The notes under the pieces were generated by a model. The model did no database searches, was not told the origin of the DNA, and worked only from the letters and a program-made list of their open reading frames with translations. This document shows, one piece after another, positions 36,014 through 40,250 of a stretch of DNA of 64,000 nt; position 1 is the stretch's first letter; the number at the start of each line of letters is the position of its first letter. Made by a program: the position numbers and the translations under genes. This DNA comes from Chlorokybus atmophyticus (lineage: Eukaryota > Plantae > Mesostigma and Chlorokybus algae): positions 1,107,099 through 1,171,098 of the forward strand of contig RHPI01003642.1 of assembly GCA_009103225.1 (NCBI GenBank), read 5' to 3'.

Positions 36014-39000
36014 TCAGCTTTCTTGCATGTCACTGCTTGAGCCCGCGGCATGGAAAGATCCTATTGGAGTCCTGGTTGCAGAAGGTATGCGTTTTATACG
36101 CTTCTGCAACCCCTTCACAACATCAATGATTCTGTCATATATTGCCTCTGCATCAGCATTGCGCCGCAAGTTACTGCCATCAAGGACGCTCTCAGAATGC
36201 TGCTTCAATGCACCCTGCGGGTCGGGGGGCGCAGGCTCTGATTGCCTCAACTCAACACTTGATGCACTCCTCTCCACCTCTTGTAGCAGCGCTTGGAGCT
36301 CAGCAAGCAGTTTGGCATCCGCAAGCATGGAAGTCGTGTCCAAGAAGTCGCACTTCTTGCATCTGTATGACTTGCGCATCTGATTGCTGTTTGCTGCTCC
36401 TGGCTTGGCAGAATACCTTGATTTCAGTGATCCCACACCTTCTGCCGACTGGCATCTCTCCGCAATCGCCACCTGACCCTCTACAACCCCCAGCGCCTTG
36501 ACCTGGTCTGACATCTCAAATGCGCGCTTTTCCAAAATGAGTGTGTATGTTGCGTTCACTTGGTTCAAGGAGTTCTGCCTGACGCTTGAGACCACGATGT
36601 CGGGTGCTGTAAGGTAAAGAAATTAAGCACCGACTTTACAACTGAGGCATGTGACATGCTGAATATGTCCATTTTACAAATATTATGCAGTTGAGCGATG
36701 CAACAGCATGAGCGACACACTCACCAAATCCAGCTGCAGCCATATCAGCTAGGATCTCTTCATCGATTGGAATATCCTTCCTGTTCATGCAGAAAAAATA
36801 AGGACCTCAAAGAGTTGTGGTGACCATCTATATGCACAAAATGGCAGCAATTGCCAAGGACAAGGGGCGATCATGTGTAACGCAAAACATGCAGGTGCAA
36901 GCTGAAGACAACCCTAGCTAATGACTTACTTCAAGTCTTTTTGCGCTGAGGGAATCGGCAGTTCACGGCCATTGTTGGTTATCCACGGATGCACCAGAAT
37001 CTCTGGCATCTTGATCCGCTCATTGGACCGACCATTGAGCAATTTTCGCAGCAGGTCAGCGCATTCGGGAGAGACCCTACTGGGTAGATGATAACTGCAG
37101 CACAAACGCGTGCAACACCGCTCAATCAGTGCCATGCCATCATGCCTAGCATCCAAAGTGAGTCCACAATGCAAATGAAGAACTACACTGACGTACTTTC
37201 CGGCGATGACAAGCTTTGGGTCCTGGCCGAATGGCATGCTCGATGTCAACATCATGTACAGGATTACGCCCAGGGACCAAATGTCACACTCAGGCCCAGC
37301 TGTAGCCGTGCCTGTTAGGATTTCCGGGCTTGCGTATGCTGGGGTCCCGCAAAAAGTGTTCATGCGAGCGGCTGACTGCAGGAAAGTGCTGAGGCCAAAG
37401 TCTACAAGCTTGACCTGCCAATGGGTAAAACCTGAGCTATCAACTTCTGCACATAGTGCAACTCTATGTGGTGCCATGCAGCCTGAGGACTCTGGCAATA
37501 AGTAATTGCAAGAAAAATCCAAGACATGGATAGACACAGTATAGACTCTCAGACCTGTGTGCACACGCGCGCAGCCGATTGCATGCAGGCACATGTGCAC
37601 ATATAGACATGCACACATAAACATGTACCCATGCAGCCATGCACCCACCCCGCCACACTTACAATTCCTCGCTCGTCCAGAAGCACGTTCTCAAGCTTCA
37701 AGTCTCTGTGCAGCACGTGATTGGTGTGGCAGTAATCAACGGCAGACACGATGCCTCGGAACAGACCGCGTGCCTCAATTTCGTCCATGCCTTGATGGCC
37801 AGCGCTTACAACATAATCAAACAGCTCACCACCACTGACATACTCCATGACGAGAAAAATAAGGCGTGGTGTTCGAATGACTTCATACCTGGCAACAAAT
37901 GGCAACTGTAAAAACCATGTCCTGGTACTGCCCATACATAGCGTGCAGGCATGTCAGTCTTTCACCGCTGAACATCTATCTACAAAGTGCCATGCCAAAC
38001 ACTTACAGCCGAGCAATGTTTCTGTGCACAAGTCGCCGCAGCACCTCAATCTCCCTGTCGACATTGGAGGGCTTGCTGTTCTCAACGACCTGTAACAACA
38101 GGTTGCCGTTCTCGTAGTTGAAACAGGTAATGCGACAATATCACCATGTGCACAACCTCACAACCGCTAACCTTCAGGGCAACAAGGCGGCCAGTAAGTC
38201 GATGTGTTGCCAAGAATACTGCAGCAAATGAACCAGCGCCCAACAACTTTCCCACGCGATAGTTGCCCACATATGACTCGAGGCTTTCCAAATTGATGGG
38301 TACCTGCGAGCAAATGGAGTCAGCACACACCGACTTGCACTGCTCGGCCATAGAGTAGGGTGCACTCACTGGTGTTGCCTTCTCTTGATAGCGATGCTTC
38401 AACTTCTGCTCAGCATGCCTCACAGACACGGAGAACACGGGCTCTTCGTCTATTGCAAATTCGTACGCATCAACTGCAGCGTCAAAAGATGAACCGTCTG
38501 CATGTCGAACGCGCAGCTGCATGCGGCCAAATGTTGAGCTGTCCCGACCCTGTTGTACGCAAAGAACAAACCATAAGATAAGCGGAACCTAGTTACGTCC
38601 AGTGCATATTGCTAAAGAAACAAAGTCAACAGACTGCAAAAGCTAATGATATGCACCTGCAGTGTGTCGACCGACAGTGTCGGCATTAGACGGCCTATGG
38701 GCGAGCCAACAATCTCATTGGCATCATGGTAGCCAAAAAGCGCAATTAAGCCATTGTTGCAAGAGCGGATTATGCCACTTGTGTCGCAGGTCATTACGCC
38801 GGCCAGTTCTGCAGTCTCCATGTCCTGAACCATTGCATGCATGTGACTACAAGCTACCTAAATGATGATGAAAACTGGCAGTAGCATGAATATTGCCCGA
38901 AAGGCTTACCTGCATCTCAGCGCAGTACACAGACTCCCCGTTAATGACTTCTTCAGAAACACGTAAACTAACCGGAAAAACATGCCCTCCCCTCGCCATG

Positions 39001-40250
39001 CCCTCCACATTCCGCACCTTGCCAATCGCTTTCTTCACACCAGTTTCTTGGTAAGCCTGTTGCACTGCATGCTAAGCAGCCAACTGAAGCAATGCACATC
39101 GTCATTGCAACCTTGTAAGATAGCTTACGTGTATGAACCTGTCATGCCGTTCAGCGTAGCGAGGCGGCATAATCGTCGACACGTTTCTCCCAATGATCTC
39201 TTCAGGTACGTATTGAAACATGCGTACAAAGTTTCTGTTCACTGACAGAACGTTCCCACGATGGTTGATAACCACCCTGCCAGCAAGTCAAGGTCAAGAT
39301 GTCTTGTGACAAGTACATAACAACCATGCAAGCGCGACCCAATTGATCCCATGGCCCAAGTTAGCTTACAACCGCGCGCGCCAACACCACAAGATGAGCA
39401 ATACCTTGCAAACGACTCTCGAACCCTCTCAATAAGTCCAACGAACAGCACTGCATCATCGACATCAACACGACTGACAGAAAGTCGAAAGGGCACCAAT
39501 GTTCCATCTTTGTGCTGTCCCTCCACTACGCGAGAAGTGCCTATGATATGTGGGATGCCACTGCGCATGTATCTCTGCCAATGACGAAGTGAGTTACCAT
39601 TGCCATTGCACATGGCAGAATGCTAACGCAGATACCTACATGTAAGTACTGGTCGTGAAGTGAGCTGTAAGGCTCAGGCATTAATGAGCATATGTTGCGA
39701 CCTATCAGTTCCTCAGCAGCCAAACCAAACAAGTCTTGGCAGTGGTAACTTGCACTGAGAATAGTGCCAGAGGAATCGATTGTGACCATGCACTTCTCTG
39801 CATTGGTCGACGCCTGTCAGCACAAGCAACCAAAGGGCTGTGAGAAAGCTAACAAGTGCCGTGCTTGCCAGGTCTAGAAGGGGCACAAAAGCAGTGCACC
39901 AGACACTGCAAGCATCACGCATACCTCAGTGCCTTTCAGGGCCTGAAAAGGCATTTTTCCCCTGTTGCGTTTGGTTCGTACAATATGGTAGTACGTCAAT
40001 GAGCTTTCAACTTCTGGCTCAACGACTTCGAATTCGCCAGCTTTCCCATCTTTGCCATGGGCACTGTGACACCCCCCCGTGGTGAACTGTATACAAAGGA
40101 CGCTGTGTGTGGCGTGACCGGGACGACACCCGTCACAGCCTCTGCAGGCTACTTTCTTCCAGTGTATCAAAGTCTACTGCAATAACTGCCAGCAGTTCAC
40201 AGCGTTTCCCAATACACCATCAATGGCGGCAACTCGGACTGCACACAGCA
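36014..40250 (-). CDS. Multi-PAS (two FixL-like heme-PAS + one PAS) SNF1/MARK-type Ser/Thr kinase with UBA-like domain; start uncertain
   Basis: PAS1 [47 protein letters not shown]; PAS2 [42 protein letters not shown]; PAS3 [23 protein letters not shown]; kinase [56 protein letters not shown]; UBA-like [23 protein letters not shown]. Confidence 0.88.

What the first reader, a model, noticed from the sequence alone, without database searches (positions are those of the whole stretch)
36014..40250. Tandem FixL-like heme-PAS domains fused to an SNF1/MARK-type kinase: candidate O2/gas-sensing Ser/Thr kinase
Seen: spliced PAS1 [39 protein letters not shown] and PAS2 [34 protein letters not shown]. 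Established: rhizobial FixL heme-PAS reads LMPEPDRSRHDSYISRY..DPHIIGIGRIVTGKRRDG, where the His of RHD is the proximal heme ligand and the Arg of IGxxR is the distal O2-stabilising residue. Both are kept in both domains here; PAS3 lacks them. The output is not a His kinase but a CAMK-group kinase ([25 protein letters not shown]) with a UBA-like segment, closer to SnRK1/MARK than to animal/yeast PAS kinase (HRDIKDEN, DFGSA). Inference: a one-component heme-based oxygen/NO/CO sensor wired to energy-stress-type phosphorylation. I do not recognise this architecture as characterised in the green lineage.
Basis: partly seen in the sequence, partly recalled or inferred. Interest (0 to 1): 0.82.

Follow-up and report, generated by a model that had tools for sequence, protein, structure and literature searches.

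The report
Heme-type PAS sensor kinase, Chlorokybus
An expressed gene of the early-diverging green alga Chlorokybus joins two FixL-like (heme/oxygen-sensor type) PAS domains and a third PAS domain to an AMPK/MARK-like protein kinase, so it may sense oxygen or another gas directly, but this has not been tested at the bench.

Summary
On the minus strand at 39954-36014 lies a 14-exon, 829-aa gene. Spliced transcript contigs from two studies support every junction, and one 3.1-kb contig carries the PAS and kinase exons together. The protein is identical to the public JGI Chlorokybus atmophyticus model Chrsp33S05012.

PAS1 and PAS2 each match only heme-PAS proteins in the PDB (FixL E 3e-19 and 2e-16, then DosP), without gaps. 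They keep the proximal His (H63, H169) and the distal Arg (R83, R189). PAS1 keeps the whole FixL pocket. An AlphaFold model superposes on the BjFixL heme domain at 0.9 A. PAS3 lacks these residues.

The output is an intact CAMKL kinase followed by a UBA fold, most like MARK, SIK and AMPK/SnRK1.

It is not unique. About 29 relatives with the same layout occur in Mesostigma (4 paralogues), Corallochytrium, Pigoraptor, three amoebozoans and environmental contigs, and the His/Arg pairs are conserved across them. A 2023 PAS survey lists the same layout in Acanthamoeba as a PASK homologue.

Heme binding and gas control of the kinase are strong inferences, not shown. I rate it a new variant of known kinds, of moderate to high interest.

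The parts
35931..40238 (-). Main body of the transcript, from the 3' end (about 35931) to the end of the exon that holds the start codon. It contains 14 coding exons.
   Evidence: Contigs of runs X1 and X2 laid. The X2 contig of 3121 nt spans all of it.
40530..40700 (-). Upstream non-coding 5' UTR exon. It continues about 95-105 nt beyond 40700, and its true 5' end was not determined. It holds uORFs, for example 40691-40557.
   Evidence: Joint 40238->40530 in both runs. uORF scan.
39925..40238 (-). Exon with the rest of the 5' UTR and the start codon (ATG at 39954-39952). An in-frame stop lies upstream within the same exon. uORFs at 40220-40197 and 40058-39996.
   Evidence: The start is the same as in the public model P0153.
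39416..39801 (-). PAS1 (residues 15-121; exons 2-3 with one intron). It carries the full FixL-type heme pocket: H63 (39657-39655), R69, H77, I78, R83 (39532-39530), L99 and V101. These correspond to BjFixL H200, R206, H214, I215, R220, L236 and I238.
   Evidence: FixL E 3e-19, gapless; TM 0.93-0.96, rmsd 0.9 A.
38822..39415 (-). PAS2 (residues 122-224; exons 3-6). It keeps the proximal His (H169, 39146-39144) and the distal Arg (R189, 39014-39012), plus L205 and V207. The R206 equivalent is Ala175, the H214 equivalent is Lys183, and the I215 equivalent is Ala184.
   Evidence: RmFixL E 2e-16, gapless over 100 residues; only FixL and DosP pass E 1e-3..
38403..38821 (-). PAS3 (residues 225-328). 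It has a PAS fold without the His/Arg heme pair and a conserved H295-x-D-G-S strand motif. It is probably the transducer or dimerisation domain next to the kinase.
   Evidence: Pfam PAS_8/PAS_9, the AF2 model, no significant PDB sequence hit, alignment.
36980..38261 (-). Ser/Thr protein kinase domain (residues 354-597; exons 8-12). All catalytic residues are present: K383, E396, H471-R-D473, N478, D491-F-G, activation-loop T506 and S-P-E517.
   Evidence: Pfam Pkinase E 1.5e-68. PDB best hits MARK4/1/3/2 at 243 bits, then SIK3, AMPK, Snf1, SNRK, BRSK2, MELK. Residue conservation.
36524..36770 (-). UBA-like three-helix domain directly after the kinase (residues about 618-660, helices to about 670). 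It carries the motif G-F-x-P-D ... N-Q-x-T/N-A-T-Y.
   Evidence: AF2 pLDDT 87-96. The model superposes on MARK/SIK3/MELK kinase-UBA structures over 318-326 columns with TMt about 0.9. Sequence alone gives nothing. UBA_SIK3 is weak in two orthologues.
36014..36523 (-). C-terminal tail (residues 661-829) and stop codon (36016-36014). The start of the tail, the only part modelled, has low predicted confidence. It holds a conserved [10 protein letters not shown]-x-L-D motif (residues 712-724) followed by a helical L-L-A-E-L-Q segment. There is no KA1 or AMPK adenylate-sensor domain.

Best explanation
This is an expressed, intact gene of Chlorokybus atmophyticus for a soluble 829-aa one-component sensor kinase.

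Sensor. Two N-terminal PAS domains are homologues of the heme-b-binding oxygen-sensor domain of rhizobial FixL. Most likely each holds a heme on its conserved proximal histidine (H63, H169). A conserved arginine on the distal side (R83, R189) would stabilise bound O2 as Arg220 does in BjFixL. The position where DosP has its distal Met ligand is Thr81 in PAS1 and Lys187 in PAS2, so a five-coordinate, FixL-like heme is expected.

Coupling. Ligand binding would shift the FG-loop and beta-sheet of the heme PAS domains. That change would pass through the third, non-heme PAS domain and a roughly 25-residue linker to the kinase.

Output. The kinase is a catalytically complete CAMKL (MARK/SIK/AMPK-like) Ser/Thr kinase with an activation-loop Thr (T506) and a UBA domain. 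The gas state of the cell would thus become Ser/Thr phosphorylation rather than a His-Asp phosphorelay.

Shown here: the gene structure, transcription, single-transcript linkage, domain homology, pocket-residue conservation and predicted folds.

Inferred: heme binding, O2 as the ligand, and both the direction and the existence of kinase regulation. If the polarity is as in FixL, the deoxy form is the active one.
For: Gene and expression:
- All introns appear as GT..AG joints in contigs of two runs from two studies, and one 3121-nt contig spans the PAS and kinase exons.
- The RNA-supported model is identical to public protein P0153, jgi/Chlat1 Chrsp33S05012.

Sensor domains:
- PAS1 and PAS2 hit only heme-PAS proteins in the PDB. 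FixL gives E 3e-19 and 2e-16, DosP follows, and both alignments are gapless.
- The pocket maps residue by residue onto BjFixL H200, R206, H214, I215, R220, L236 and I238.
- The AF2 model (mean pLDDT 79.5) superposes on the BjFixL heme domain with TMt 0.93-0.96 and rmsd 0.8-0.9 A.
- Across 29 relatives at 30-60% identity, H63 is kept in 25 of 26, R83 in 24 of 27, H169 in 23 of 28 and R189 in 27 of 29.
- Xing et al. [quoted passage not shown]

Kinase:
- Pfam Pkinase E 1.5e-68 and all catalytic residues present.
- A UBA fold follows the kinase, as in MARK, SIK and MELK.
- No transmembrane segment: the highest 19-residue Kyte-Doolittle mean is 1.5.
Against: - No biochemical evidence exists for heme binding, gas binding or regulation. 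Everything functional rests on homology.
- PAS2 lacks the Arg206 equivalent (Ala175) and has Ala184 for Ile215, so its heme affinity or ligand tuning may differ, or it may bind nothing.
- Some family members have lost the PAS2 His (Mesostigma Mv16477, Thecamoeba), so that site is dispensable in places.
- Animal PASK shares the PAS+kinase layout and, by published inference, its PAS ancestry, yet binds non-heme ligands.
- The polarity and mechanism of PAS-to-kinase coupling are unknown.
Confidence: 0.6

Rival explanations
1. The PAS domains do bind heme, but the physiological signal is NO, CO or the heme redox state (or heme availability itself) rather than O2.
For: Sequence cannot separate O2 from NO, CO or redox sensing. 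FixL heme domains have been crystallised with O2, CO, NO and CN bound (entries listed). The two heme sites differ: PAS2 lacks the R206 and I215 equivalents. That would fit two sites tuned to different ligands or affinities.
Against: The distal Arg is the residue that gives FixL its selectivity for O2 (established FixL biochemistry, from my own knowledge). It is among the best-conserved positions in both domains.
Confidence: 0.2
2. It is a protist/algal PAS kinase (PASK orthologue) whose PAS domains bind a small metabolite or nothing. The His/Arg are ancestral leftovers or serve structure, and the protein acts as a nutrient or energy sensor like PASK.
For: The overall layout matches PASK: three PAS domains plus a C-terminal-side CAMKL-group kinase. 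The whole-protein language-model search ranks animal PASK clusters first, at 0.97. Xing et al. 2023 list Acanthamoeba XP_004333348.1 (three cluster-3 PAS domains + Pkinase) as a PASK homologue and note that human PASK PAS-A has lost the heme His.
Against: - Leftover residues would not stay conserved at both sites across Archaeplastida, Holozoa and Amoebozoa at 30-60% overall identity.
- PAS1 retains the entire FixL pocket, not only the His.
- The kinase plus UBA module resembles MARK, SIK and AMPK, and no PASK appears among the best PDB or database hits.
Confidence: 0.13
3. The PAS domains serve only for dimerisation or scaffolding of a constitutively regulated AMPK-related kinase, which is controlled by T-loop phosphorylation and its UBA domain and has no ligand input.
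For: PAS domains often mediate dimerisation. The T-loop Thr506 and the UBA domain are the usual control elements of AMPK-related kinases.
Against: This does not explain selective conservation of buried heme-pocket residues in two domains but not the third.
Confidence: 0.05

Closest known systems
FixL heme-binding PAS domain (Bradyrhizobium japonicum / Sinorhizobium meliloti O2 sensor; PDB 1DRM, 1XJ4, 1D06)
   Same: PAS1 and PAS2 are clear homologues. Identity is about 40-45% over 100 gapless residues. They share the proximal His, the distal Arg, and in PAS1 the propionate-binding Arg/His and the hydrophobic distal residues. The predicted fold superposes at under 1 A.
   Different: The output is a eukaryotic Ser/Thr kinase, not HisKA/HATPase, and there is no FixJ-type partner. 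Two heme-type domains sit in tandem, followed by a third PAS domain. The protein is soluble and eukaryotic, and the gene has introns.
PAS kinase (PASK / yeast Psk1, Psk2), including the protist 'PASK homologues' of Xing et al. 2023 (e.g. Acanthamoeba XP_004333348.1)
   Same: N-terminal PAS domains (three in human PASK according to that paper) precede a CAMK-group kinase. The paper infers that PASK PAS domains descend from the FixL/DosP heme cluster. The Acanthamoeba entry has the same layout and a similar size, 727 aa.
   Different: Human PASK PAS-A lacks the heme His and binds other ligands. This protein has a UBA domain after the kinase. PASK is absent from the 60 best PDB and 120 best database matches. 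Orthology was not tested, because no PASK sequence was available.
AMPK-related kinases: MARK/Par-1, SIK, AMPK/Snf1/SnRK1, MELK, BRSK
   Same: The kinase is 40-45% identical to them. It has the same activation-loop Thr and a UBA domain packed after the kinase. The best PDB matches by sequence and by fold are of this group.
   Different: It has no KA1 or adenylate-sensor C-terminal domains. In the kinase tree the family sits outside the AMPK/SnRK1 clade (100/100) and the MARK-like clade. No known member of those families carries N-terminal heme-type PAS domains.
Chlamydomonas FXL (FixL-like) proteins (Murthy et al. 2012, FEBS Lett; cited from memory, could not be retrieved here)
   Same: As I recall, FixL-like PAS domains from a green alga were shown to bind heme through the FixL-His200 equivalent and to bind O2 with Kd of about 0.1-0.2 mM. 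That would be a precedent that eukaryotic algal FixL-like PAS domains are real heme-O2 binders.
   Different: I cannot confirm the FXL output domains. No Chlamydomonas protein appeared among the PAS+kinase hits. The paper is not in the searchable library.

Membership tests
FixL/DosP-type heme-b PAS domain | Proximal histidine on the F-alpha helix (BjFixL His200) | tested here: met
   H63 (PAS1) and H169 (PAS2) align without gaps to the FixL His. They are conserved in 25 of 26 and 23 of 28 relatives. PAS3 lacks it.
FixL/DosP-type heme-b PAS domain | Distal Arg on G-beta that binds O2 (BjFixL Arg220), and no DosP-type distal Met | tested here: met
   R83 and R189 are conserved in 24 of 27 and 27 of 29 relatives. 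The Met95-equivalent positions are T81 and K187.
FixL/DosP-type heme-b PAS domain | Propionate contacts (Arg206, His214) and hydrophobic distal residues (Ile215, Leu236, Ile238) | tested here: inconclusive
   PAS1 meets all of them: R69, H77, I78, L99, V101. PAS2 meets them only partly: A175, K183, A184, L205, V207.
FixL/DosP-type heme-b PAS domain | Fold superposes on the solved FixL heme domain | tested here: met
   The AF2 model against 2VV6, 1XJ6, 1XJ4 and 1DP6 gives TMt 0.83-0.96 and rmsd 0.8-1.0 A over 101-104 residues.
FixL/DosP-type heme-b PAS domain | Binds heme and a diatomic gas | not testable with these tools
   Needs recombinant protein and spectroscopy.
FixL proper (two-component sensor histidine kinase) | HisKA + HATPase_c transmitter | tested here: not met
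   Pfam finds only PAS and Pkinase families in P0153. It is therefore FixL-like only in its sensor domains.
AMPK-related CAMKL kinases (MARK/SIK/AMPK type) | Complete catalytic core and an activation-loop Thr | tested here: met
   K383, E396, D473, N478, D491 and T506 are present and conserved in the family. The best PDB hits are MARK, SIK, AMPK, Snf1, SNRK, BRSK and MELK.
AMPK-related CAMKL kinases (MARK/SIK/AMPK type) | UBA domain immediately after the kinase | tested here: met
   A confident three-helix bundle superposes together with the kinase on MARK/SIK3/MELK kinase-UBA structures. Sequence alone gives no hit.
AMPK/SnRK1 or MARK orthologue | C-terminal KA1 or adenylate-sensor domains, and placement inside those clades | tested here: not met
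   No PF02149 or PF16579 hit. The family lies outside the AMPK/SnRK1 clade (100/100) and the MARK-like clade in the ML tree.
PAS kinase (PASK) | Several N-terminal PAS domains followed by a CAMK-group kinase | tested here: met
   Three PAS domains plus Pkinase. This is the same layout as the Acanthamoeba 'PASK' entry in Xing et al. 2023, Data S3.
PAS kinase (PASK) | Kinase domain orthologous to animal/fungal PASK | tested here: inconclusive
   No PASK appears among the best 60 PDB or 120 database hits. However, no PASK sequence could be placed in the tree.

The most novel reading that the evidence does not exclude
This family is the heme-retaining, ancestral form of eukaryotic PAS kinase. It would be a direct heme-based O2 (or gas) sensor wired to AMPK-like Ser/Thr signalling. 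It arose early in eukaryotes and survives in the earliest-diverging streptophyte algae, unicellular holozoans and amoebozoans. It became a metabolite sensor in animals and fungi and was lost on the line to land plants. If so, these algae sense oxygen by a route unlike the plant cysteine oxidase / N-degron pathway.
Probability: 0.3. Interest if true: 0.8.

Novelty: new variant of a known kind. Interest (0 to 1): 0.62.

Why it matters
Direct heme-based oxygen sensors are well understood in bacteria but rare and debated in eukaryotes. Land plants sense oxygen indirectly, through plant cysteine oxidases and the N-degron pathway.

This protein couples a FixL-type heme pocket to an AMPK/MARK-like kinase, so it would link oxygen supply straight to energy-stress-type phosphorylation in one polypeptide.

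Members occur in streptophyte algae, holozoan protists and amoebae, and the layout is shared with PAS kinase. That makes a long-standing question testable: what did PAS kinase originally sense?

The protein is soluble, has recognisable catalytic residues and close paralogues, and two PAS domains with naturally different pockets. It is therefore a practical target for spectroscopy and kinase assays.

Tried and rejected
- My first exon chain, built by eye on GT-AG rules (862 aa), was wrong at two in-frame places. RNA contigs show exon 6 starting at 38824, not 38857, and an extra 66-nt intron at 38304-38369.
- Pfam on single exons found the N-terminal halves of the PAS domains but missed the C-terminal halves. 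The public protein id P0153 solved this.
- Searching the C-terminal 232 residues against the PDB by sequence found nothing, so the UBA call rests on the predicted fold.
- Paper searches for the Chlamydomonas FXL work and for any 'heme-PAS kinase' description found nothing usable. The two Mesostigma/Chlorokybus genome papers do not mention the gene.
- The protein-atlas search on the kinase part gave only generic kinase clusters.
- Looking up the one NCBI-derived relative (P0397) led to an unnamed, highly fragmented assembly, GCA_016307145.1.
- The search of earlier findings by sequence returned nothing.
- I rejected 'pseudogene or annotation artefact' because of the expression evidence, intact reading frame and conserved family. 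I rejected 'bacterial contamination' because of the 13 CDS spliceosomal introns and the eukaryotic kinase.
- Operators' notes: the single read-laying run used 5001 letters.
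Full report
**What is there**

The finding lies on the minus strand. I first chained exons by eye on GT-AG rules. I then laid public run contigs on window 35700-40700 (5001 letters, within the operators' limit).

Two runs from two different studies (X1 of 2021, X2 of 2013) hold 56% of the sampled words of the stretch. 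That is close to what a spliced mRNA of this gene would hold. Their contigs show 14 joints, all CT..AC on the plus strand, which is GT..AG for a minus-strand gene. One X2 contig of 3121 nt runs from 35932 through every exon to beyond 40700. The PAS and kinase exons are therefore on one transcript.

The RNA corrected my model at two in-frame places: exon 6 starts at 38824, and there is an extra 66-nt intron at 38304-38369.

The resulting CDS has 14 exons, 39954-36014, encoding 829 aa. An in-frame stop lies upstream of the ATG inside the same transcribed exon, so the start is fixed unless a non-AUG codon is used. The 5' UTR is about 560 nt, is split by a 291-nt intron, and carries several uORFs.

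The protein is identical, residue for residue, to a public model, eukprot jgi/Chlat1/5248/Chrsp33S05012 (P0153). The window is therefore from Chlorokybus atmophyticus, and the gene is already annotated but unnamed.

**The sensor half**

- Pfam finds PAS families three times in residues 15-330.
- Against all PDB sequences, residues 1-345 hit only heme-binding PAS proteins. These are FixL of S. meliloti and B. japonicum (E 3e-19 to 8e-18), then DosP/EcDOS, plus one recent multi-sensor histidine kinase entry.
- PAS2 alone gives the same picture: RmFixL E 2e-16, then BjFixL and DosP.
- Both alignments are gapless over about 100 residues, so FixL numbering transfers directly.

| BjFixL residue | PAS1 | PAS2 |
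|---|---|---|
| His200 (proximal ligand) | H63 | H169 |
| Arg206 | R69 | A175 |
| His214 | H77 | K183 |
| Ile215 | I78 | A184 |
| Arg220 (binds O2) | R83 | R189 |
| Leu236 | L99 | L205 |
| Ile238 | V101 | V207 |

PAS1 has the full pocket. The position of the DosP distal Met is Thr81 in PAS1 and Lys187 in PAS2, which points to a FixL-like five-coordinate heme.

PAS3 has neither the His nor the Arg, and it has no significant PDB sequence match.

An AlphaFold2 model of residues 1-345, built on a 14-sequence family alignment (mean pLDDT 79.5), superposes on BjFixL heme-domain structures with target TM-scores of 0.93-0.96 and rmsd 0.8-0.9 A.

**The output half**

- Residues 354-597 are a complete protein kinase (Pfam E 1.5e-68). 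They carry K383, E396, HRD473, N478, DFG491-493, activation-loop T506 and SPE.
- The best PDB sequence matches are MARK4/1/3/2 (243 bits). SIK3, AMPK alpha, Snf1, SNRK, BRSK2 and MELK follow. No PASK entry is among the best 60.
- In the 5.8-billion-protein collection, the nearest kinases outside the family are SnRK1/AMPK catalytic subunits at 43-45% identity. Again no PASK appears in the best 120.
- The segment after the kinase is not recognisable as UBA by sequence alone. Pfam UBA_SIK3 is only weak, and only in two orthologues.
- A second AlphaFold2 model (pLDDT 85.6) predicts a confident three-helix bundle at residues about 621-670. The whole kinase-plus-bundle superposes on the kinase-UBA crystal structures of MARK1/2/3, SIK3 and MELK, with TMt about 0.9 over 318-326 columns.
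- There is no KA1 or adenylate-sensor domain and no transmembrane segment.

**Relatives**

A phmmer search of 1.84 billion cluster representatives with the 56-aa PAS1 exon gave 1171 hits. Among them, and in three word-index searches, I found about 29 proteins with the same PAS-PAS-PAS-kinase layout (Pfam):

- four paralogues in Mesostigma viride (53-60% identity)
- Corallochytrium limacisporum (44%) and Pigoraptor chileana (40%), both unicellular holozoans
- the amoebozoans Vermistella, Thecamoeba and Stygamoeba
- a set of environmental contigs (sources)

No land-plant or chlorophyte member appeared. After the family, the hit lists go straight to SnRK1/AMPK.

Across these 29 sequences the heme-pocket pairs are among the most conserved positions. 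H63 is kept in 25 of 26, R83 in 24 of 27, H169 in 23 of 28 and R189 in 27 of 29, as are the catalytic residues.

In a maximum-likelihood tree of kinase+UBA regions (43 rows, LG+C20):

- Chlorokybus is sister to the four Mesostigma paralogues (100/100).
- This group joins Corallochytrium, Pigoraptor and one environmental sequence with 100/99 support.
- All PAS-kinases form one group with weak support (74/59).
- The family lies outside the AMPK/SnRK1 clade (100/100) and outside a MARK-like clade.

The tree is unrooted and has no PASK.

**Literature**

- Neither genome paper on Mesostigma/Chlorokybus mentions this gene.
- The closest published statement I found is Xing, Gumerov and Zhulin 2023 (PMC10468136).
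  - PASK PAS domains are closest to cluster 3.
  - 'PASK-PAS' of Acanthamoeba, Thecamonas and Capsaspora fall inside cluster 3.
  - Their Data S3 lists Acanthamoeba XP_004333348.1 (727 aa) as three cluster-3 PAS domains plus Pkinase, under the heading PASK.
  - They note that human PASK PAS-A has lost the heme residue.
  - Their 14 representative genomes include no streptophyte alga.
- The layout has therefore been catalogued and read as PASK ancestry. It has not been characterised, and it has not been reported in the green lineage.
- From memory only, Murthy et al. 2012 (FEBS Lett) showed heme and O2 binding by FixL-like PAS domains of Chlamydomonas FXL1 and FXL5. I could not retrieve that paper.
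I did not test it.

**How it most likely works**

Shown here:
- an expressed single transcript
- two FixL-type pockets under purifying selection
- a third PAS domain
- an intact CAMKL kinase with a T-loop Thr and a UBA fold

Inferred:
- Each of PAS1 and PAS2 binds heme b through its His.
- O2, or another diatomic gas, binds on the distal side and is held by the Arg.
- The resulting change in the FG loop and beta-sheet is passed through PAS3 to the kinase. This could be by relief or imposition of cis-inhibition, or by a change in dimer geometry.
- If the polarity is as in FixL, the deoxy form is active. Falling oxygen would then switch on an AMPK-like kinase.
- The different PAS2 pocket could give a second affinity range or a second ligand.

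I put about 0.7 on heme binding, about 0.45 on O2 specifically being the signal, and 0.6 on the combined statement as worded.

**Verdict**

- The claim of an unrecognised architecture needs softening, because the gene is publicly annotated and there are the Acanthamoeba 'PASK' listing and a eukaryote-wide family.
- It is a new variant of known kinds: a FixL-type sensor on a Ser/Thr kinase, possibly a heme-retaining PAS kinase.
- This is the first such case noted in the green lineage as far as I could find.

Noticed in passing
window 39955-40238 and 40530-40700+ (minus strand): The 5' UTR is long (about 560 nt), contains a 291-nt intron and carries several AUG uORFs: 40691-40557 (44 codons), 40220-40197 (7 codons) and 40058-39996 (20 codons). 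This could mean translational control of the kinase.
   Followed up: partly
window about 36370-36332 (residues 712-724): The otherwise poorly conserved C-terminal tail holds a conserved motif, [10 protein letters not shown]-x-L-D, followed by [12 protein letters not shown]. It is shared with all four Mesostigma paralogues. A C-x-x-C is also present in Corallochytrium and Pigoraptor. The only Pfam hit is a weak GRF-like zinc ribbon (E 0.014). Function unknown.
   Followed up: partly
window 30302-34981 (plus strand): The convergent neighbour is a large gene with repeated DUF4457 matches (E down to 1e-124) and a weak F5/8 type C domain, read from three long ORFs. It ends about 950 nt from the 3' end of the kinase transcript.
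   Followed up: partly
P0001 (3618 aa, Artemidia motanka), P0154 (1677 aa, Flectonema neradi), P0002-P0012: Very large proteins, some over 3000 aa, carry many FixL-like PAS repeats: the P0001-P0012 rows show 8-13 matched stretches each. Pfam finds no other domain in P0001 and P0154. These two come from Artemidia and Flectonema (diplonemids, from memory); P0002 is from a metagenome. They outscored every PAS-kinase in the representative search.
   Followed up: partly
window 40045-40148 and 37065-37225: Run X4 carries the same organism label and study as X1. It holds short contigs at 95-99% identity: five differences in 104 nt of the 5' UTR exon, and one spliced piece across the 37094/37197 junction. 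That fits a closely related strain or cryptic species expressing the same gene.
   Followed up: no
P0156 (Mesostigma Mv16477), P0231 (Thecamoeba): These relatives have lost the PAS2 proximal His (Pro and Glu respectively) while keeping the PAS1 His. The second heme-type site is therefore dispensable in some lineages.
   Followed up: partly
window 38825-38857 and 38304-38369: Two in-frame alternatives exist in the genomic sequence. One is an upstream AG acceptor that would add 11 residues between PAS2 and PAS3. The other is a 66-nt intron that, if retained, adds 22 residues in the PAS3-kinase linker. Only the shorter forms are seen in the RNA contigs, and contigs drop rare variants.
   Followed up: partly
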